From positions 186,001-250,000 of the IMG/VR virus record IMGVR_UViG_3300049001_000044: a stretch of DNA of 64,000 nt; one strand, given 5' to 3'. The position numbers were made by a program, and so were the translations under genes. The notes below the pieces were generated by a model. That model saw only the letters and a program-made list of their open reading frames with translations, was not told the origin of the DNA and made no database searches. Position 1 is the first letter of the stretch, and the number at the start of each line of letters is the position of its first letter. This document shows positions 9,112-47,699 of the stretch, piece by piece.

Positions 9112-9186
9112 TGGTGGTTCCAGCGGGGATCGAACCCGCGACCTTAGGTTTTAGAGACCCGGCTCTGCCAACTGAGCTATGGAACC
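9112..9186 (-). tRNA. tRNA-Sup(CUA) amber suppressor 1
   Basis: Cloverleaf GGTTCCA/TGGAACC, loop CT-CTA-AA, A73, encoded CCA. Confidence 0.85.
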
Positions 9187-9264
9187 TGGTGGCGTGTATC
9201 GGACTCGAACCGATGACCAAGGAGTTTAGAGGTCCCTGCTCTACCAAACCTGAGCTAACACGCC
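9187..9264 (-). tRNA. tRNA-Sup(CUA) amber suppressor 2
   Basis: Cloverleaf GGCGTGT/ACACGCC, loop CT-CTA-AA, A73, encoded CCA. Confidence 0.85.
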
Positions 9265-21631: not shown

Positions 21632-22201
21632 TTACTTTACTTCCTTATCAACCGGTTCACGATCGATAATCTTGATCTTGTTAAGGTCGAACACAGCGAT
21701 TTCCCAGATGATACCCATATTCTCAGAAGTGTAATCGATGCTTTCGACCGCACCATTCAAACCAAATCGTTTGAATATCTGTTGTGCCTTCCGGTGCCCG
21801 ACGTGGTTAACGACTTCACCGATAAAACCACGACCGTTCTTCAGTGAATTGTGATCGCGCGGCATTGTCTTACGCGTGAAGCCCATGTACTCGGCAATCT
21901 TCTCCATCGTCTCTCTCATCCTGTCGGTTGGGAGCAACATATTGTTGTAGAAGTTGTCTACGTCGATTTCGACGGTGTACATTGTTGCGGTATCTGTGTT
22001 CGCGTGCTTTGCATATTTCTTCGCGAATTGTTTGTTCGTGATGAAGTACATTCCTGGACCAAGGATGCGATAGCCTTCGCCAGTTCCAGAAAACTTCAAA
22101 TCGAAGTCACCATCGAAGGTGTTACCGCAGTGGTATGCGGTAATCTTCTGTCCTTCAATGTTTGGGCGAACATATTCTTCAAATAGCTCTTTGACTTTCA
22201 T
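21632..22201 (-). CDS. ADP-ribosyltransferase-like (ART-PolyVal-type) protein
   Basis: AYHCG...FDLKFSGTGEG...GPGMYF pattern; MKVKELFEE N-terminus. Confidence 0.55.
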   Translation of the reverse strand: MKVKELFEEYVRPNIEGQKITAYHCGNTFDGDFDLKFSGTGEGYRILGPGMYFITNKQFAKKYAKHANTDTATMYTVEIDVDNFYNNMLLPTDRMRETMEKIAEYMGFTRKTMPRDHNSLKNGRGFIGEVVNHVGHRKAQQIFKRFGLNGAVESIDYTSENMGIIWEIAVFDLNKIKIIDREPVDKEVK

Positions 22202-24182: not shown

Positions 24183-24192
24183 ACAATTCTAC

Positions 24193-24275
24193 TTAGCTCG
24201 ACGTTCTGGAATCGAACCAGAGTTTTGGCCATCAATCGTCTGCTCCGCGAAAAGCAAACTACCCCGTCGAGCTAA
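24193..24275 (-). ncRNA. tRNA-like RNA with an 11-bp terminal stem and T-arm, no CCA
   Basis: TTAGCTCGACG/CGTCGAGCTAA; TCTGG-TTCGATT-CCAGA. Confidence 0.5.
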
Positions 24276-24282
24276 AAAGAAT

Positions 24283-24627: not shown

Positions 24628-24862
24628 ACAAAGTGCTCTTACGCATACAACTTGATTACTACAGAAGGAGCCCGCGCTCAACCTCCTGTTCATCAAATTG
24701 TTTCGCTGCATTTCAGCAGCTCATCAGTGCGTTTAATTTACCACGAACATAGTGAAGAGAATCGAACTCTCCATCCCTGTCGAAGGGGACATTCCAATCC
24801 TTGCTACTTGTCTCGATCCTTCCAACCACTGTCGAGAACCCATTGGGTAGGGTGGTAAAACT

Positions 24863-24960: not shown

Positions 24961-25025
24961 ACCAACAAAGTAAGTGTTCGAAGGGGTAATCGTTAAAAGG
25001 GATAACCTTCGATCGTCCGGTTGGT
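24961..25025 (-). ncRNA. Y RNA-like element Y1 (minimal)
   Basis: ACCAAC-CG-GACG-ATCGAA-GG-TTATCC...CC-TTCGA-..CTTT-GTTGGT. Confidence 0.65.
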
Positions 25026-25300: not shown

Positions 25301-25304
25301 ATAT

Positions 25305-25373
25305 TGACAACAAAAGATAAGGTGACGGAGAGGTTTTCGCAAAATGAAGGTAACCATCACCGGTCGGTTGTCA
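25305..25373 (-). ncRNA. Y RNA-like element Y2 (minimal)
   Basis: TGACAAC-CG-ACC-GGTGAT-GG-TTACC...CC-GTCACC-TTATCTTTT-GTTGTCA. Confidence 0.7.
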
Positions 25374-25410
25374 GACTTTCTAGATGGCTTCTAAGGCCAT
25401 CTGAAACAGA

Positions 25411-25543
25411 AATTTGTAAGAGCAACAAAAAGTGCCGTCGGGCATTGTCCACCTTAACCATAGGACATGTAGGAATCGAACCCACTCGGTTTTTATTTCC
25501 ATTAAAAAGATAACCAACTAGCTAGCGGTTACTCTTACAAATT
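25411..25543 (-). ncRNA. Y RNA-like element Y3 with T-arm and D-like hairpin
   Basis: 16-bp terminal stem, CG bulge, GG-TTATC, GTGGG-TTCGATT-CCTAC. Confidence 0.7.
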
Positions 25544-25572
25544 GCTGCTTCGTTGCTACTGAAGAGAAGTAA

Positions 25573-25601
25573 ATTATACAACGCTTTGTACTACTGAAAA
25601 A
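25573..25601 (-). promoter_or_regulatory. early-type promoter GTTTTC-N17-TATAAT
   Basis: Repeated motif. Confidence 0.6.
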
Positions 25602-25616
25602 CTGTAAGTTCGTTTT

Positions 25617-25745
25617 TGGTTGAGAATGTCTGGATTCGAACCAGATCCACGCCGATATGAGAGGATAACCAATCACAAGCCGGTTACGTAAGCAACAAAA
25701 ATTAGCGATCGATGTTTACGTGTGCTGCCATTACACCACATCTCA
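25617..25745 (-). ncRNA. Y4: CCA-ended tRNA body with a Y-like module replacing the anticodon loop
   Basis: Acceptor, D and T arms, CCA; insert GATCGC-TAATTTTT-GTTGC-TTAC-GTAAC-CG-GCTT-GTGATT-GG-TTATCC. Confidence 0.7.
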
Positions 25746-25805
25746 ATTGAACTTGCTGTGCTGCAAGAGATGATATTTTAACTTGAACTCTTGCAACTAA
25801 AAACT

Positions 25806-25944
25806 TGGTGGAGTTGGGTAGGATTCGAACCTACCTAAGCCAGAGGCGTCGCCTTTACATGGATAACCAATTACGAGGCGGTTGCATAACAACAAAAAGT
25901 TGTAATCGGGGATTTCGATGGGTTTTCCAATTCCCTACAACTCC
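25806..25944 (-). ncRNA. Y5: CCA-ended Tyr-like tRNA body with a Y-like module replacing the anticodon loop
   Basis: GGAGTTG/CAACTCC-A-CCA; insert CC-GATTAC-AACTTTTT-GTTGT-TAT-GCAAC-CG-CCTC-GTAATT-GG-TTATCC. Confidence 0.7.
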
Positions 25945-26072
25945 ATTCGCGTGAACATCTAGTAGTCCACTACCGATCAAAATCGTTACTGATGCCTGCC
26001 ACCATCGAGGGCGTCATTTCAGGCGAGCTCGCTATTAGCACGAGCTGGGCATTCTGTGCTGCAAGAGATGAT

Positions 26073-26102
26073 ATTTTATACCAACTGCTTGCAAATAAAA
26101 AC
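26073..26102 (-). promoter_or_regulatory. early-type promoter GTTTTT-N18-TAAAAT
   Basis: Near-duplicate of 25757-25804 (shared CTGTGCTGCAAGAGATGATATTTT). Confidence 0.6.
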
Positions 26103-26103
26103 T

Positions 26104-26180
26104 TGGTACCCACGGTGAGATTCGAACTCACATATCACAAGGATTAAGCTTGTTGCCGTTGCCAATTAGGCTACGTGGGC
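26104..26180 (-). tRNA. tRNA-Leu(UAA), short variable loop
   Basis: Loop CT-TAA-TC, A73, CCA. Confidence 0.8.
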
Positions 26181-26692
26181 AATGTTCTTCCACGCTTGAA
26201 TCCTTGGAACTGTTCGAATTGATCTGGTCTAATCAGCTTGTTGATTTTGCCGTCAGTTATCCAGAACTTGCCAAACTGCGGATTCTTGTCACCCAATCTT
26301 TTACCGACTTGGGCTTCGGAAACTTTCTTACGTTGCTCTTCAGTAAAGACATAGCCATGAACTGAATTTCTGATCTTGCTCTTGACCTCTTCGCTGTGGC
26401 TCTTGCCTTTGAAGTGTGGTCCACCTTCTCCTCCAACGCCAAGGTTGTAGGTATCAGATCGTTGAACAAAATCTTCAGTCACTAGCTCTTTCTCTTTGAG
26501 ATTCATTTCGTCCTCTGTGTCGAAGATGAAGAGAATCTCTTTCACGAAAGAGTCTTTACCGTATTTCTTGATCGCTGCATTCAGTGCTTTACCAGATCCA
26601 AAATACGAATCGTCAAGGTCAAGCGTCTGATGCTTACCAATGTAGAACTTACCGTTCGTAGTGTTGGTAATTTTGTAGATTGTGTAGAACAT
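26171..26692 (-). CDS. Seg-like GIY-YIG homing endonuclease with NUMOD3 motif
   Basis: TIYKITNTTNGKFYIGKH...YFGSG...E...YN; FKGKSHSEEVKSKI; start at 26692, TAG stop. Confidence 0.85.
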   Translation of the reverse strand: MFYTIYKITNTTNGKFYIGKHQTLDLDDSYFGSGKALNAAIKKYGKDSFVKEILFIFDTEDEMNLKEKELVTEDFVQRSDTYNLGVGGEGGPHFKGKSHSEEVKSKIRNSVHGYVFTEEQRKKVSEAQVGKRLGDKNPQFGKFWITDGKINKLIRPDQFEQFQGFKRGRTLPT

Positions 26693-26704
26693 AAAAGCAC
26701 TCAG

Positions 26705-26778
26705 TAGCGGGTAATGGATTCGAACCAATGATTTCCGGCTTATGAGACCGACGAGATAGACCACTTCTCTAACCCGCA
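26705..26778 (-). tRNA. tRNA(CAU), Met or Ile2 class, no encoded CCA
   Basis: Loop CT-CAT-AA, 1:72 mismatch. Confidence 0.75.
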
Positions 26779-26794
26779 ACTGAATACTCTCAAA

Positions 26795-26878
26795 TGGTAC
26801 CTCGGGTGGGATTCGAACCCACAAGGGTCTTGCTTCTAAGGCAAGTAGCTGTACCAGATTTACATTAACCACCGAGGC
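26795..26878 (-). tRNA. tRNA-Leu(UAG), short variable region
   Basis: Loop CT-TAG-AA, A73, CCA. Confidence 0.78.
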
Positions 26879-26880
26879 AT

Positions 26881-26959
26881 TGGTACCCAAGGACGGATTC
26901 GAACCGACAGATCACCGAGGTTTGAGCTCAGTAGCTTTACCAATTTGCGTAACTTGGGC
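26881..26959 (-). tRNA. tRNA-Leu(CAA), short variable region
   Basis: Loop CT-CAA-AC, A73, CCA. Confidence 0.8.
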
Positions 26960-26963
26960 AATG

Positions 26964-27084
26964 AATGAAACGAAAGTGAAAGTCGGTAAACCTCTTTCGA
27001 GGGTGTCGGACTTCGATGTCCGCTCTAGCGAGCCGAATAAGATCGGCAGCATTAACCCGATAACCAACAATCTACGGTTTCATT
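26964..27084 (-). ncRNA. Y RNA-like element Y6 with three internal hairpins
   Basis: AATGAAAC-CG...GTT-GG-TTATC...CC-GAC-TTTCACTTTC-GTTTCATT. Confidence 0.6.
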
Positions 27085-27390: not shown

Positions 27391-27514
27391 AACAAACAAA
27401 AGTAATTGAAGGAGTTGCTCTCGTCCAACTTCATGAGAGCTACTAGATTTCTCTAGTAATGGATTCGAACCATGTCATTCTTAAGCAAGGATAACCTTCA
27501 ATAAACGGTTTGTT
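27391..27514 (-). ncRNA. YrlA-like element Y7 (T-AS-D permuted tRNA domain)
   Basis: Y stem, then ATGG-TTCGAAT-CCAT, TACTAGA-GAAA-TCTAGTA and GCTCTC/GAGAGC hairpins. Confidence 0.75.
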
Positions 27515-27529
27515 GGTGAAACATAAACT

Positions 27530-27605
27530 TGGTGGAGGATATCGGTTTCGAACCGATCACCTCATGCTTGCAAAGCACGCGCTCTCCCAAATGAGCTAAT
27601 CCCCC
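27530..27605 (-). tRNA. tRNA-Ala(UGC)
   Basis: G3-U70, loop TT-TGC-AA, CCA. Confidence 0.9.
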
Positions 27606-27666
27606 ATACGTATAAGACGACATATCCGACTCTGAAGACCGGCTGTGGGACCTTATACTTGAAAAT

Positions 27667-27742
27667 TGGAGCGGGTAAGGGGACTCGAACCCCTGACATC
27701 TTCCTTGGCAAGGAAGTGCTCTACCAACTGAGCTACACCCGC
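27667..27742 (-). tRNA. tRNA-Gly(GCC)
   Basis: Loop TT-GCC-AA, U73, CCA. Confidence 0.92.
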
Positions 27743-27746
27743 ATAA

Positions 27747-27891
27747 GCAACAAAGGAGCGATAACGAAGATACCCTTTCGGGTGGACCGGCGCGTCTACC
27801 ATTCCGCCATCACCAAATTTCTTCGGTGAGAGGGACTCGAACCCTCACGTCTTGCGACACCTGTTTGAGATAATCATTATCTATCGGTTGC
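27747..27891 (-). ncRNA. YrlA-like element Y8 (permuted tRNA-Leu-like domain)
   Basis: Y stem with GA/TC covariation; Leu-type variable arm, T-arm, loop-capped acceptor stem, D arm TGGCGGAATGGTAGACGCG. Confidence 0.75.
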
Positions 27892-28140
27892 AAAGTTTAT
27901 TGCTGATAATTTGAAGTAGTTTCCCGTTAGTAGTCTTAGGTCCGCTTAGGACTGCTTTTCCGCTTCCACACTTCTAGTAAGTATTGTGGAGATACGGTAA
28001 TTGCACTTAGACTCCCCGTTTAACTAGAGATCACTCAGAGTACTCTACCGGGTCTACATCAAACCATCAAGTAGCAACCCTGGCTGCCGCCAACTCCATA
28101 CTGGTATAAGAGAGTCAGACTTTTCAAGGAAGCTACTTGA

Positions 28141-28215: not shown

Positions 28216-28387
28216 AAAAAGAATTCCAAATTGTAGAAGAACAATTTGGTAGAGAAGTCATTATAACTCTTTACCAACTTATCGAAAACTCGTTGTGGTC
28301 TTCGATGAAGAAAAGTGTTCGACTGGATAACGAACTTCACCCCAGCTCCCCAACACTTTCTACTGCTGTGCAATTTGGTATAAGAGA

Positions 28388-45899: not shown

Positions 45900-46234
45900 T
45901 ATTCGTCGACAACTTCACCGCTCAGACCATCACGGTCATGATACACCGCACCATGCTCGAAGTGGTAGATGCTTTCGGCATTCTTCCCATCGTTCAGGAC
46001 GATCTCACCACGGCTGCCACCCACGATCGAGAGAATTTCCCCGGTGAATTCAATGATCTCCTGGAAGTCGGAGTTATCCTCAACCCAGTGGTATGCGTCA
46101 TGAGGGGTATTGAACACCTTGTAATCAACGCCATCACCGCCTGAGCACGCCAGATAGCGCTTGTTATTCGGGGATTCGGTGAGTGTGGTCTGGGTCTGCA
46201 TACCCGCGAGTTTGCGAAGCTTATTTTGATCCAT
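45899..46234 (-). CDS. putative head internal protein with N-terminal LRKLAG
   Basis: MDQNKLRKLAGM...LTE. Confidence 0.7.
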   Translation of the reverse strand: MDQNKLRKLAGMQTQTTLTESPNNKRYLACSGGDGVDYKVFNTPHDAYHWVEDNSDFQEIIEFTGEILSIVGGSRGEIVLNDGKNAESIYHFEHGAVYHDRDGLSGEVVDE

Positions 46235-46304
46235 ATGATTTCTCCTGGAGGATAGAGATAAAATCAGTATTTACTATAATTCTAATTTTATCACACATTC
46301 GAAT

Positions 46305-46631
46305 TTAGATTTTGAAAGTTACCCAAGAGGAATCCTTGATGTAAACCTTTGCATCCCACATGTATTCACCGGCTTTTTCACCGTGGCCAATGTAGGTCGC
46401 AAACTCAGATTCCCTGACAAAGTCCCTCATCACACCGGAGAAACCCGCGAATGCAGTCCTTGTCACCCAACCAAGTCCATTCTCTACAGTGATGTGGTGA
46501 ACACCTTCAGAATCTTTCCAGTGTTCGATCTCGCCATGGTGAGGGAAGGCTTCCTTGATTGCTTTCTTGATTTGGGAGAGAAGCTTTTTGACTTGCTTCT
46601 CTTCACGTTCAGCTTGATTGACCAGTGCCAT
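46305..46631 (-). CDS. hypothetical protein
   Basis: GGAGG RBS, 108 aa. Confidence 0.7.
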   Translation of the reverse strand: MALVNQAEREEKQVKKLLSQIKKAIKEAFPHHGEIEHWKDSEGVHHITVENGLGWVTRTAFAGFSGVMRDFVRESEFATYIGHGEKAGEYMWDAKVYIKDSSWVTFKI

Positions 46632-46665
46632 GCTACCTCCATGTTATCAACATGGAAGCATTATA

Positions 46666-47202
46666 TCACAGTTGCGTTACGAAGATCGTGTTTTCAGAAG
46701 TGAATGGATTTTGATGAATGTCTACCCCACGATTACGAAGGAACAAATTCAGTTCCTGCAAGGCGATGTCACGCGTCATGTCCTTATCGCGGCTGCAGGT
46801 AAATTCATACCATTCATCTTCCTCGCTCACGTCGTATGGTGAGTTGTCGATCATGAAGACTGCTCGCTCCACTCCACCCTTCTTGTACTGGATAAAAGCT
46901 GCCCCATCGGTGTTGAAGATACCGCCACATCGACCATCGCCGAAAATCGTGAAGGTCTCATCCTCATTCTCGAGCGACAGCACCTGGTTGATCCCACCAT
47001 TAGCAATCTCCAGCACTACGATGTTACGAATCTTGTTGAATGTAAACGTGGTCACTTCTTCCAGATCGTACGCTTGGACCACATCCTGCCAATTTTGGTA
47101 CTCACCACCGTCCAGGTACATTGCGCGGAACGAGTTGTATCCTACCGCTTCCGCCAGCCCAACTTCATCTGCTCGGCACAGCCAATTACCAACCTTGATC
47201 AC
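46666..47202 (-). CDS. hypothetical protein
   Basis: 178-aa ORF in operon. Confidence 0.65.
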   Translation of the reverse strand: MIKVGNWLCRADEVGLAEAVGYNSFRAMYLDGGEYQNWQDVVQAYDLEEVTTFTFNKIRNIVVLEIANGGINQVLSLENEDETFTIFGDGRCGGIFNTDGAAFIQYKKGGVERAVFMIDNSPYDVSEEDEWYEFTCSRDKDMTRDIALQELNLFLRNRGVDIHQNPFTSENTIFVTQL

Positions 47203-47699
47203 TTGAGAATCCTTTCAATGAAGTCCTTACGATCGTACTTCCTTACTTCGCAGTTCTCAACACGATAGCCACGTGGGTCCAGCACGTCCATCAAAACACC
47301 GTGGCAGAAGATAATGAGGTCGAACTCATGAGCATCGACGACTCGCTTAACACGATCAACGACGAACTCCCTACTCTCCGTGTTGACGTAATCTTCTGGG
47401 TCATGCTCAGACGGTTGGTGCCAGCACTCATTCACTCGCGAATCAACGACGATGGGGTACCCCATGCCGAACGTTGCGATCTCAGCAGTGAGTTGAGTGC
47501 GCTTATGCTTGGAGGCGATGATGGTGGTGTGAGTACCAAATCGATCCTCATTCATAATAGAGGGCAGGGTCTTGTGCAGAGCTAGCGCCTGGTCGACGCC
47601 TTTTGGCGTCAGAATGTTTGCGTGGTCAGGGACGTCAAAGTACCTGGAGTCGGCGTTTGCCAGACACTCACCGTGTCGAATCAAGATAATGCTGCTCAT
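47199..47699 (-). CDS. histidine phosphatase (PGM-like)
   Basis: LIRHGE, LT..G..QA, R..TA and HG motifs. Confidence 0.85.
   Translation of the reverse strand: MSSIILIRHGECLANADSRYFDVPDHANILTPKGVDQALALHKTLPSIMNEDRFGTHTTIIASKHKRTQLTAEIATFGMGYPIVVDSRVNECWHQPSEHDPEDYVNTESREFVVDRVKRVVDAHEFDLIIFCHGVLMDVLDPRGYRVENCEVRKYDRKDFIERILK

What the first reader, a model, noticed from the sequence alone, without database searches (positions are those of the whole stretch)
27391..27891. Y7 and Y8 look like recent tRNA-to-YrlA conversions
Seen: Y8 contains a Leu-type variable arm, a T-arm (GAGGG-TTCGAGT-CCCTC), a loop-capped acceptor stem and a textbook tRNA-Leu D arm (TGGCGGAATGGTAGACGCG), in permuted T-AS-D order. 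Y7 has a perfect 7-bp acceptor capped by GAAA. Y1 and Y2 have no tRNA domain, Y3 lacks the acceptor hairpin, and Y6 has three unrelated hairpins. Inference: the Y stem was repeatedly fused to different tRNA bodies, giving a graded series within one genome.
Basis: partly seen in the sequence, partly recalled or inferred. Interest (0 to 1): 0.6.

Follow-up and report, generated by a model that had tools for sequence, protein, structure and literature searches.

The report
Phage Y RNAs with tRNA-like bodies
Two small non-coding RNA genes lying between tRNA genes of a 343-kb phage belong to a large, conserved family of Y RNAs (likely partners of the phage's Ro60 protein) whose middle part is a rearranged tRNA, one of them a tRNA-Leu look-alike; both are old and conserved, not recent conversions.

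Summary
On the minus strand, Y7 (27391-27514) and Y8 (27747-27891) each have a closing stem around variable hairpin, T arm, loop-capped acceptor hairpin and D arm. Y8's D arm matches the phage's tRNA-Leu(GAG) at 21 of 22 positions. They share a 5' motif (RRCCG-N6-11-GGUUAYC) and a 3' U-run plus stem with six more elements in the window. In related phages this motif sits 230-1300 nt upstream of the Ro60/TROVE gene, about 240-fold enriched there. The stem has the bulged C and UUAYC of animal Y RNAs and nematode sbRNAs, and also occurs in the published mycobacteriophage YrlA locus. So they are YrlA-type Y RNAs, although Rfam's YrlA model misses both.

"Recent conversion" is not supported. Y8 has seven counterparts in other viral contigs (54-89% identity), and 21 of 37 base pairs show compensatory changes. 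Y7 has counterparts in three other lineages. The bare, partial and full types are each conserved, so the series is a stable set of paralogues. That the modules derive from different tRNA classes (Leu type versus class I) is plausible. Ro60 binding and function are untested. New points: about eleven Y RNAs per genome, placed in tRNA arrays about 165 kb from Ro60, and a conserved tRNA-Leu mimic.

The parts
27747..27891 (-). Y8: complete Leu-type Y RNA (145 nt). It starts about 250 nt after tRNA-Val and ends 4 nt before tRNA-Gly(GCC).
   Evidence: Sequence and fold. Scores 155.6 bits with model R1. Seven counterparts score 84-152 bits, and the structure is supported by covariation.
27869..27888 (-). 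Y8 5' Y motif ACCGAUAGAUAAUGAUUAUC. It contains the last base of stem 1, the bulged C, the 5' strand of stem 2 and the UUAUC loop motif.
   Evidence: Motif scan. The same motif is linked to the TROVE gene in relatives. Alignments to the Rfam Y_RNA and sbRNA consensus were made on family members.
27849..27858 (-). Y8 variable-arm hairpin GUC-GCAA-GAC
   Evidence: Two of its 3 pairs covary.
27830..27846 (-). Y8 T arm GAGGG-UUCGAGU-CCCUC
   Evidence: 100% of cells paired, and 2 of 5 pairs show compensatory changes.
27810..27829 (-). Y8 acceptor-like hairpin, 8 bp capped by GAAA
   Evidence: All 8 pairs show changes on both sides among the eight counterparts. A GAAA cap is present in most of them.
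27791..27809 (-). Y8 Leu-type D arm UGGCGGAAUGGUAGACGCG
   Evidence: 21 of 22 identical to the phage tRNA-Leu(GAG), z 9.0. The D stem is invariant in all eight counterparts.
27773..27782 (-). Y8 extra hairpin CCC-GAAA-GGG between the D arm and the return strand of stem 2. It has no tRNA counterpart.
   Evidence: Present in six of the eight counterparts, with 2 of 3 pairs covarying.
27747..27767 (-). Y8 3' strands: stem 2 (UCGUUAUC), internal loop GCUCCUUU, stem 1 (GUUGC)
27391..27514 (-). Y7: complete class-I-type Y RNA (124 nt). It lies between the two tRNA-Ala(UGC) genes, ending 3 nt before the downstream one.
   Evidence: Scores 42 bits (E 3e-10) with the Y8-type model R1. Counterparts are L045:1225-1336, L064:6923-7036, L051:1410-1523 and L144:5221-5334.
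27490..27509 (-). Y7 5' Y motif ACCGUUUAUUGAAGGUUAUC
27459..27473 (-). Y7 T arm AUGG-UUCGAAU-CCAU
   Evidence: 17 of 17 identity with tRNA-Met(CAU) of the same array, z 6.3.
27441..27458 (-). Y7 acceptor-like hairpin UACUAGA-GAAA-UCUAGUA
   Evidence: The G005 counterpart has GAGUCUC-GAAA-GGGAUUC, which differs at every position yet still pairs.
27417..27440 (-). Y7 D-like arm: 6-bp stem and a 12-nt loop containing GG
   Evidence: It is not significantly similar in sequence to any phage tRNA (z 0.5). Counterparts have the more canonical GCUCC-AGUCGG-GGAGC.
24961..25025 (-). Y1: bare Y RNA (65 nt), with no tRNA module
   Evidence: (18.5 bits).
25305..25373 (-). Y2: bare Y RNA (69 nt)
25420..25534 (-). 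Y3: Y RNA with a variable hairpin, T arm, D-like arm and one more hairpin, but no acceptor hairpin
   Evidence: (31.6 bits). Counterparts in G001, G002 and L064.
25664..25687 (-). Y4: 5' Y motif followed by a T arm. Its 3' closing strand was not resolved.
25792..25886 (-). Y5: Y RNA with a T arm only. An alternative, longer closure reaching 25692 is possible.
26965..27083 (-). Y6: Y RNA with three hairpins that are not tRNA-like
   Evidence: (23.6 bits).

Best explanation
Y7 and Y8 are two conserved members of a multi-copy family of phage Y RNAs of the YrlA/YrlB kind.

Each RNA has two parts:
1. A Ro60-binding module. Its ends pair in a 5-7 bp stem, followed by a bulged C, an asymmetric U-rich internal loop, a second 6-9 bp stem closed by GG:CC, and the loop motif UUAYC.
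2. A variable 'payload'. In Y7 and Y8 the payload is a tRNA body whose acceptor stem is closed by a loop and whose anticodon arm is replaced by the Y stem. Y8 copies a class II tRNA-Leu; Y7 copies a class I tRNA.

Inferred steps:
- The RNAs are co-transcribed with the tRNA array.
- Their ends are cut by the tRNA-processing enzymes. RNase P acting on the tRNA 3-12 nt downstream would define the 3' end.
- The stem binds the phage-encoded Ro60 ring.
- The tRNA-like elbow and minihelix dock a tRNA-recognising partner, such as a processing, modification, CCA-adding or repair enzyme or a synthetase. Different Y RNAs would thereby direct Ro60 to different partners.

Shown here: the anatomy, its conservation and covariation, the linkage to the Ro60 gene, and the placement in tRNA arrays.
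Inferred, not shown: Ro60 binding, processing, and the tethering function.
For: 1. Family. The motif RRCCG-N6-11-GGUUAYC occurs 8 times on the minus strand inside the window's tRNA array and twice more in the genome's other array.

2. Link to Ro60.
- The genome encodes a 536-aa TROVE/Ro60 protein, about 40% identical to annotated phage Ro-like proteins.
- In 23 related TROVE loci there are 30 motifs in the 31.6 kb just upstream on the same strand, against 2 in 501 kb elsewhere; 17 of 23 loci carry one.
- A variant copy lies about 65-400 nt upstream of this phage's own TROVE gene.
- Related jumbo phages carry 10, 6 and 4 copies on one strand, with controls of about 1.

3. Likeness to known Y RNAs.
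- Family members score 27-45 bits against Rfam YrlA over the full model (E down to 8e-7).
- The published mycobacteriophage YrlA locus, used as a control, scores 36 bits and carries the same CCG..GGUUAYC motif in three tandem Y RNAs.
- Short members reach the gathering score of the nematode sbRNA family RF01656 (38.2 against 38) and align to Y_RNA.
- A bulged C in the lower stem and UUA(U/C)C at the start of the loop are the defining features of sbRNAs and vertebrate Y RNAs (PMC4450293). YUAY opening the V loop and the V-T-AS-D order define YrlA (PMC4201824).

4. Structure under selection.
- Eight Y8-type RNAs give 91.5% paired cells, and 21 of 37 pairs have changes on both sides. None of 500 shuffles reached this, and slid controls gave 34-56% paired.
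- Family-wide, stem 2 has a perfect complement in 84 of 128 elements, against 22.8 +/- 4.2 when partners are swapped between elements.

5. tRNA likeness.

6. Array context. Of 128 elements, 38 have a same-strand tRNA 3-12 nt downstream, and 92 have one within 1 kb.

7. Repair context. The phage encodes a CCA-adding-type nucleotidyltransferase and two Rnl2-type RNA ligases.

8. Precedent. A Thermus phage Ro60 binds two phage-encoded Y-like RNAs and host PNPase (PMC12135203).
Against: - Rfam's YrlA and Y_RNA models give no match to Y7 or Y8, even in a 158-nt search at E up to 10.
- Y7 and Y8 lie about 165 kb from the Ro60 gene, outside the '4 kb, same strand' criterion of Chen et al. 2014.
- The exact GNCGAAN0-1G motif is absent. 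Y8 has ACCGAUAG and Y7 has ACCGUUUA.
- In this phage group the Y RNAs next to the TROVE gene have no T loop. The tRNA-like ones might therefore serve something other than Ro60.
- My test of a 2-bp mini-helix after the bulged C did not beat its control.
- Y7-type covariation was judged helix by helix, not with a formal count.
Confidence: 0.72

Rival explanations
1. One reading: Y7 and Y8 are recent conversions in which a Y stem captured a tRNA gene, and Y1-Y8 show the stages of that process within one genome.
For: Y8's D arm is 21 of 22 identical to the phage's own tRNA-Leu(GAG), and Y7's T arm is 17 of 17 identical to tRNA-Met(CAU) in the same array. The elements sit among tRNA genes, where recombination would be easy. 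The family contains bodies of several tRNA classes.
Against: - Counterparts of Y8 (seven contigs, 54-89% identity) and of Y7 (three lineages) have the same architecture with many compensatory changes. Both types therefore predate the divergence of phages whose Ro60 proteins are 64% identical.
- The Leu D arm is nearly universal, so identity in it says little about age.
- Y8's acceptor and variable arms match no phage tRNA-Leu, and Y8-type D arms do not follow their own phage's tRNA-Leu genes.
- The 'intermediate' types (Y3, bare) are themselves conserved.
Confidence: 0.1
2. Y7 and Y8 are circularly permuted tRNA genes. Their transcripts would be circularised or ligated and then trimmed to give working tRNAs, as in some algae and archaea.
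For: The 3' half precedes the 5' half. The acceptor strands are joined by a short loop. The rejoined Y8 halves are called tRNA-Leu by ARAGORN. The phage encodes two RNA ligases and a CCA-adding-type enzyme.
Against: - There is no anticodon loop or 5-bp anticodon stem.
- The ends instead form two stems of about 13-15 bp carrying the conserved Y motif, which is shared with elements that have no tRNA part at all.
- The segment before the variable arm is not conserved as an anticodon loop among the eight Y8-type RNAs.
- Y8 has an extra hairpin after the D arm.
- Y7 has no nucleotides at the positions of tRNA residues 8-9.
Confidence: 0.03
3. The elements are structured spacers or processing signals of the tRNA array, or decoys for host factors that attack tRNA. 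On this reading they have no link to Ro60, and their likeness to Y RNAs is superficial.
For: They sit at tRNA-like spacing within tRNA arrays. Y7 and Y8 lie far from the Ro60 gene. The TROVE-adjacent copies lack tRNA-like parts. tRNA mimics could titrate host tRNA-targeting defences.
Against: - The same stem motif is about 240-fold enriched directly upstream of TROVE genes.
- It occurs in the mycobacteriophage YrlA/YrlB locus.
- It aligns to the YrlA, sbRNA and Y_RNA models.
- A mere spacer would not need an invariant CCG..GGUUAYC.
- Because there is no anticodon loop, the elements could not act as decoys for anticodon nucleases.
Confidence: 0.12

Closest known systems
YrlA, the tRNA-like bacterial and phage Y RNA (Salmonella, M. 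smegmatis, mycobacteriophages; Chen et al. 2014, PMC4201824; Rfam RF02553)
   Same: - The ends pair in a stem carrying a CCGA-type motif.
- YUAY opens the variable region.
- The tRNA-like domain is in the order V, T, closed acceptor, D.
- A Ro60 gene is present in the genome.
- The 7-8 bp acceptor hairpin resembles that of M. smegmatis YrlA, which RNase P cleaves.
- The mycobacteriophage locus carries the same CCG..GGUUAYC motif.
   Different: - Y7 and Y8 do not match the Rfam model.
- They lie about 165 kb from Ro60, inside a tRNA array.
- There are about eleven copies per genome instead of one or two.
- Y8's body is class II tRNA-Leu-like with an added hairpin, whereas the YrlA consensus is class-I-like.
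- The exact GNCGAAN0-1G motif is not met.
YrlB, Yrn2 and Thermus phage phiLo Yrl1/Yrl2 (Y RNAs without a full tRNA domain; PMC4201824, PMC12135203)
   Same: Y1, Y2 and the copy at G000:59200-59272 are bare stem-loop Y RNAs. Y4 and Y5 carry only a T arm, as M. smegmatis YrlB does.
   Different: The known examples are encoded directly upstream of Ro60. Here most copies lie in tRNA arrays.
Vertebrate Y RNAs and nematode stem-bulge RNAs (Rfam RF00019, RF01656; PMC4450293)
   Same: [quoted passage not shown] Short family members reach 38.2 bits against RF01656, whose gathering score is 38.
   Different: These are bacterial-virus genes without Pol III promoters or oligo-U tails. Their payloads are tRNA-like. 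Y7 and Y8 themselves do not hit these models.
Circularly permuted tRNA genes (Cyanidioschyzon type; from general knowledge)
   Same: The 3' half lies upstream of the 5' half, with the acceptor strands linked by a short spacer.
   Different: There is no anticodon arm and no splice-type junction at the termini. The termini form a conserved Y stem.

Membership tests
YrlA (Chen et al. 2014; Rfam RF02553) | tRNA-like domain in the order variable arm, T arm, loop-closed acceptor stem, D arm, enclosed by a stem formed from the 5' and 3' ends | tested here: met
   Folds and coordinates for Y7 and Y8. Covariation supports the Y8-type structure.
YrlA (Chen et al. 2014; Rfam RF02553) | Short 5' motif GNCGAAN0-1G | tested here: not met
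   Y8 has ACCGAUAG and Y7 has ACCGUUUA, so only the CCG(A) core is kept. The control mycobacteriophage Y RNAs read GGCCGAUUCG, GGCCGAGAG and GGCCGAAGG, so the published motif is also loose in accepted members.
YrlA (Chen et al. 2014; Rfam RF02553) | Conserved YUAY at the start of the variable region | tested here: met
   UUAUC in both Y7 and Y8, and in 128 delimited family members. The family-wide figure follows partly from how the search pattern was built.
YrlA (Chen et al. 2014; Rfam RF02553) | Encoded within about 4 kb of the Ro60 gene on the same strand | tested here: not met
   The TROVE gene is at G000:46070-47680 (minus strand). Y7 and Y8 are at G000:213391-213891 (minus strand), so the strand is the same but they lie about 165 kb away. 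The motif family as a whole is tightly linked to TROVE genes in relatives, and a variant copy is adjacent in this genome.
YrlA (Chen et al. 2014; Rfam RF02553) | Score at or above the Rfam gathering score (69 bits) | tested here: not met
   No hit for Y7 or Y8 at E up to 10. Relatives score 27-45 bits. The published phage YrlA control scores only 36 bits, so the threshold also excludes an accepted phage member.
YrlA (Chen et al. 2014; Rfam RF02553) | Bound by Rsr/Ro60; carries tRNA modifications (pseudouridine 55, dihydrouridine) | not testable with these tools
   Needs immunoprecipitation and modification mapping.
Metazoan Y RNA / nematode sbRNA (RF00019, RF01656) | [quoted passage not shown] | tested here: inconclusive
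   The sequence fits: stem 1 is followed by C and then G in every member, and alignment to the models places that C at the bulge. However, the C is fixed by my own search pattern, and the pairing of the next two bases did not beat its control.
Metazoan Y RNA / nematode sbRNA (RF00019, RF01656) | [quoted passage not shown] | tested here: met
   GGUUAUC or GAUUAUC follows stem 2. Stem 2 covaries across the family (84 of 128 against 22.8 +/- 4.2). The feature is defined in PMC4450293.
Metazoan Y RNA / nematode sbRNA (RF00019, RF01656) | Score at or above the Rfam gathering score | tested here: not met
   No hit for Y1-Y8 in the window. One short relative in L205 scores 38.2 bits against a gathering score of 38.
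tRNA (tRNA-Leu) | Contiguous cloverleaf with an anticodon arm and an open acceptor end | tested here: not met
   Called by neither ARAGORN nor Rfam's tRNA model. The acceptor is loop-closed and there is no anticodon loop.
tRNA (tRNA-Leu) | Leu-type D arm, long variable arm and canonical T arm | tested here: met
   Y8 only: 21 of 22 identity, z 9.0 and z 5.4. The rejoined halves are called tRNA-Leu, against 0 of 200 shuffled constructs.
Permuted tRNA gene | Termini that rebuild an anticodon arm or intron junction after joining | tested here: not met
   The termini form two conserved stems carrying the Y motif, and no anticodon loop is conserved.

The most novel reading that the evidence does not exclude
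This group of jumbo phages runs a modular adaptor system. One Ro60 ring is served by about ten or more interchangeable Y RNAs that mature through the tRNA-processing pathway. All share an animal-type Ro-binding stem, and each carries a different payload. The payloads include mimics of specific tRNA types, such as the conserved tRNA-Leu mimic Y8. Each would recruit a different tRNA-handling enzyme (for example LeuRS, the CCA-adding enzyme, RNase P or a repair ligase) to Ro60, for quality control or protection of the phage's 52 tRNAs during infection. With its 7-8 bp acceptor hairpin, Y8 might also be opened by RNase P, given a CCA end and even charged with an amino acid.
Probability: 0.25. Interest if true: 0.75.

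Novelty: new variant of a known kind. Interest (0 to 1): 0.5.

Why it matters
What the tRNA-like domain of bacterial Y RNAs does, and which partner it recruits, is still an open question.

- **A natural comparison set.** One genome carries bare, partial and full tRNA mimics on the same Ro-binding stem, including a conserved mimic of one particular tRNA (Leu). Comparing which proteins each RNA brings down with Ro60 would make the partner question directly testable.
- **Wider occurrence.** Y RNAs can be far more numerous than the one to four known per organism. They can also sit far from the Ro60 gene, hidden in tRNA arrays where annotation pipelines and the Rfam model miss them.
- **A link between bacterial and animal Y RNAs.** The phage stems share the bulged C and UUAYC with animal Y RNAs and nematode sbRNAs.

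Tried and rejected
- Rfam scans found no YrlA or Y_RNA hit on Y1-Y8, whether at gathering threshold, at E up to 10, or on small sub-windows. The weak YrlA hits elsewhere in the genome overlap tandem tRNAs, a false-positive type already described by Chen et al..
- The phage collection shares only tRNA genes with this region at the DNA level.
- The neighbouring 185-aa ORF has no relatives in viral contigs, so relatives were reached through the TROVE protein instead.
- A relaxed Y8 pattern gave 69 hits, of which only the three already known were genuine.
- A test for a 2-bp helix after the bulged C did not beat its control: 87 of 128 against 92. That detail is not claimed.
- MAFFT misaligns the interior of the Y7-type RNAs. 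I therefore built no Y7 model and give helix-by-helix comparisons instead of a formal covariation count.
- The promoter and terminator scan was not above chance.
- The whole-genome search with R1 through the genome search missed Y7 because of its first-look filter. The direct cmsearch found it.
- In the ARAGORN rejoining test, shuffling only one half still gave calls (103 of 200 and 15 of 200). Only the control with both halves shuffled is informative.
- Comparing D arms with each phage's own tRNA-Leu genes gave no sign of concerted evolution.
- The looser pattern CCG..GGTTAYC is not enriched genome-wide in Sinorhizobium phage Phosso (9 and 9 against controls of 7 and 10). There are suggestive pairs of copies and one copy 1.6 kb upstream of its Ro gene.
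Full report
**Setting.** The window is bases 186001-250000 of a complete 343,229-bp virus record with direct terminal repeats. ARAGORN finds 52 tRNA genes in the genome, all on the minus strand, in two arrays at 52-62 kb and 195-214 kb; 26 of them are in the window. The flagged stretch, 27391-27891, lies in the second array.

**Check of the observation.** Read on the minus strand, the stretch holds, in order: element Y8, tRNA-Gly(GCC), a 61-nt hairpin, tRNA-Ala(UGC) and element Y7.
- Y8 (27891 to 27747, 145 nt) has a closing stem GCAAC/GUUGC and a second stem GAUAAUGA/UCGUUAUC. Between their strands lie a GUC-GCAA-GAC hairpin, the T arm GAGGG-UUCGAGU-CCCUC, an 8-bp hairpin capped by GAAA, the D arm UGGCGGAAUGGUAGACGCG, and an extra CCC-GAAA-GGG hairpin.
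- Y7 (27514 to 27391, 124 nt) has the same plan, with a perfect 7-bp hairpin UACUAGA-GAAA-UCUAGUA.
- Folding energies alone are only modestly better than shuffles (z -1.95 and -2.52).

**Likeness to tRNA.**
- Y8's acceptor-plus-D half matches the phage tRNA-Leu(GAG) at 21 of 22 positions (z 9.0, 0 of 300 shuffles). Its variable-plus-T half gives z 5.4.
- Y7's T arm is 17 of 17 identical to tRNA-Met(CAU) (z 6.3), but Y7's D arm is no closer to any phage tRNA than shuffles are (z 0.5).
- Y8's two halves, rejoined through a native anticodon arm, are called tRNA-Leu by ARAGORN. None of 200 constructs with both halves shuffled is called.
It holds only for Y7's D arm at the sequence level.

**What the elements are.** All eight elements in the window, and two in the other array, share a 5' motif RRCCG-N6-11-GGUUAYC and a 3' U-run followed by the complement of the first stem.

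The genome encodes a 536-aa TROVE/Ro60 protein at 46070-47680 on the minus strand. It is about 40% identical to annotated "Ro-like RNA binding proteins" of actinophages and of Sinorhizobium phage Phosso. I used this protein to fetch 23 related loci.
- In those loci the motif lies 230-1300 nt upstream of the TROVE gene on the same strand in 17 of 23 cases. That is 30 copies in 31.6 kb there, against 2 copies in 501 kb elsewhere.
- A variant copy (AGCCG..GGUUACC, closing on CUUUGCUAGC) lies just upstream of this phage's own TROVE gene.
- Related jumbo phages carry 10, 6 and 4 copies on one strand, with reversed-pattern controls near 1.
- A scan of viral contigs for the motif followed by a T loop returned 89 stretches. 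From all loci I delimited 128 distinct elements. Of these, 64 have a T loop and 29 have the full series of T arm, closed acceptor and D arm, many of them with a textbook UAGCUCAGUGGUAGAGC.

**Comparison with known families.**
- Rfam's YrlA and Y_RNA models do not match Y7 or Y8, even in a 158-nt search at E up to 10.
- They do match other members of the same family over the whole model: 44.9, 40, 36.4, 35.4 and 27-33 bits, with E down to 8e-7.
- The published mycobacteriophage YrlA locus, taken as a positive control, scores 36.1 bits, also below the 69-bit threshold.
- That control locus holds three tandem Y RNAs, each with the same CCG..GGUUAYC motif.
- Short family members reach the gathering score of the nematode stem-bulge RNA family (38.2 against 38) and align to the vertebrate Y_RNA model. 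The alignments place the phage CCG at the bulged C of the lower stem and GGUUAUC at the end of the upper stem.
- A bulged C, a G:C-clamped upper stem and UUA(U/C)C opening the loop are the conserved features of sbRNAs and vertebrate Y RNAs (PMC4450293). YUAY opening the variable region, and the order V-T-AS-D, are those of YrlA (PMC4201824).
- I therefore file Y7 and Y8 as YrlA-type Y RNAs by architecture and family linkage. I note that three formal criteria are not met: the Rfam score, distance to Ro60, and the exact GNCGAA motif.

**Age.**
- A covariance model built from Y8-type sequences finds eight such RNAs at 84-156 bits. Two of them were not in the training set. The next class scores 55 bits. 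Y7 scores 42, Y3 31.6, Y6 23.6, Y5 20.4 and Y1 18.5.
- The eight are 54-89% identical to Y8.
- On their alignment, 91.5% of cells pair, and 21 of 37 pairs have changes on both sides. None of 500 shuffles reaches these values, and sliding the partners gives 34-56% paired and at most 5 such pairs.
- All eight acceptor-hairpin pairs covary, and the Leu D stem is invariant.
- One counterpart lies in a phage whose Ro60 protein is 64% identical to this one's.
- Y7-type RNAs occur in three other lineages. They have the same six helices, but acceptor hairpins that differ at every position (for example GAGUCUC-GAAA-GGGAUUC), with compensatory changes in the T, D and closing stems.
- Y3-type and bare types are conserved too.
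- Y8-type D arms do not track their own phage's tRNA-Leu genes.
- Both elements are therefore old, and the "series" is a stable set of paralogues.
- The family does contain bodies of clearly different tRNA classes, and one element with the non-permuted D-anticodon-T order. More than one capture from tRNA genes is therefore plausible, but I did not test it with a tree.

**Mechanism (inferred).**
- The elements sit at tRNA-like spacing. Of 128 elements, 38 have a same-strand tRNA 3-12 nt downstream and 36 have one 0-15 nt upstream. Y8 ends 4 nt before tRNA-Gly and Y7 ends 3 nt before tRNA-Ala. Co-transcription, with end definition by RNase P and the tRNA 3'-end enzymes, is the simplest reading.
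- By analogy with Deinococcus, Salmonella and Thermus phage phiLo (PMC4201824, PMC12135203), the stem would bind the phage Ro60 and the payload would dock a second protein.
- For Y7 and Y8 the payload is the tRNA elbow plus an acceptor/T minihelix, the part of tRNA that RNase P, the CCA-adding enzyme, T-loop modification enzymes and some synthetases read. This last point is from general knowledge.
- The phage encodes a CCA-adding-type enzyme and two Rnl2-type ligases but no RtcB. That fits the proposed role of Ro-type proteins and a tRNA-like partner in RNA repair in jumbo phages (PMC7824862).

**Limits.**
- The bulged-C geometry is supported by alignment to known models. It is not supported by my own covariation test of the adjacent 2-bp helix, which did not beat its control.
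- The 3' end of Y4 and the exact closure of Y5 remain unresolved.

**Verdict.** They are a new variant of a known kind: YrlA-type Y RNAs expanded to about eleven per genome, moved into tRNA arrays, and including a conserved tRNA-Leu mimic.

Noticed in passing
window 24695-24753 (minus), in the spacer 24628-24862 between tRNA-Pro and tRNA-Leu(GAG): A hammerhead-ribozyme core (CUGAUGAG, a GCUGC/GCAGC stem, CGAAAC) matches Rfam Hammerhead_3 at 32.5 bits (E 2e-5 in the local search), below the 48.5-bit threshold. The outer stems fit the model poorly. By eye, a different arrangement with a long closed stem seems possible.
   Followed up: partly
window 9112-9264 (minus): Two tandem tRNA genes with anticodon CUA, which reads the amber stop codon; ARAGORN labels them 'Pyl'. 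I did not test whether the phage reassigns TAG.
   Followed up: no
window 26171-26890 (minus): A GIY-YIG / NUMOD3 homing-endonuclease-like ORF (SegE type, E 2e-9) sits inside the tRNA array.
   Followed up: partly
window 27892-28140 (minus): A structured stretch of about 250 nt lies between tRNA-Val and Y8. It includes a 12-bp stem, CCAUCAAGUAGC...GCUACUUGAUGG. In the close relative L064 it is absent and Y8 follows a tRNA directly. A shared CUCUUAUACCA word recurs at about 28370-28385.
   Followed up: no
window 27606-27666 (minus): A 61-nt spacer between tRNA-Ala and tRNA-Gly folds into a single long hairpin (GUAUAAGG...CUUAUAC). It lacks the Y motif.
   Followed up: no
window 24183-24282 (minus): A 100-nt element with an 11-bp closing stem (UUAGCUCGACG/CGUCGAGCUAA) encloses a hairpin and a T arm (CUGG-UUCGAUU-CCAG). 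It lacks the CCG..GGUUAUC motif and may be another kind of tRNA-derived small RNA.
   Followed up: no
window 25301-26103 (minus), two copies at about 26060-26095 and 25735-25775: A repeated hairpin-plus-tail word (UUGCAAG...AAAAUAUCAUCUCUUGCAGCACAG) precedes two of the Y elements. It could be a phage promoter or a processing signal.
   Followed up: no
G000:47746-48080 (minus), outside the window: A 335-nt element with a variant Y stem (GCUAGC-CG..GGUUACC, closing on CUUUGCUAGC) lies about 65-400 nt upstream of the Ro60/TROVE gene. In this phage group the Ro60-adjacent Y RNAs have no T loop, whereas the tRNA-like ones lie in tRNA arrays.
   Followed up: partly
L042, minus strand (motif at G005:C1:64286-64307): A 130-nt family member whose payload runs D-like arm, anticodon-like stem-loop, T arm. 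That is the normal tRNA order, with the Y stem in place of the acceptor stem, as described for Deinococcus Yrn1.
   Followed up: no
L220:2590-2960 (Mycobacterium phage Dandelion, upstream of its TROVE gene): Three tandem Y RNAs (bare, tRNA-like, bare) all carry GGC-C-GA..CGGUUAYC at the 5' end and CAUGUCU at the 3' end. The record annotates none of them.
   Followed up: partly
window 21632-22201 (minus): An ORF inside the tRNA array with a sub-threshold match to ART-PolyVal, an ADP-ribosyltransferase domain of polyvalent proteins (28.4 bits against a cut-off of 31.2).
   Followed up: no
G008:C1:136562-147420 (minus), a 359,550-bp viral contig: At least eleven copies of CCG-N-UGGUUAUC lie within 11 kb on one strand. 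This is the densest Y-motif cluster seen here.
   Followed up: no
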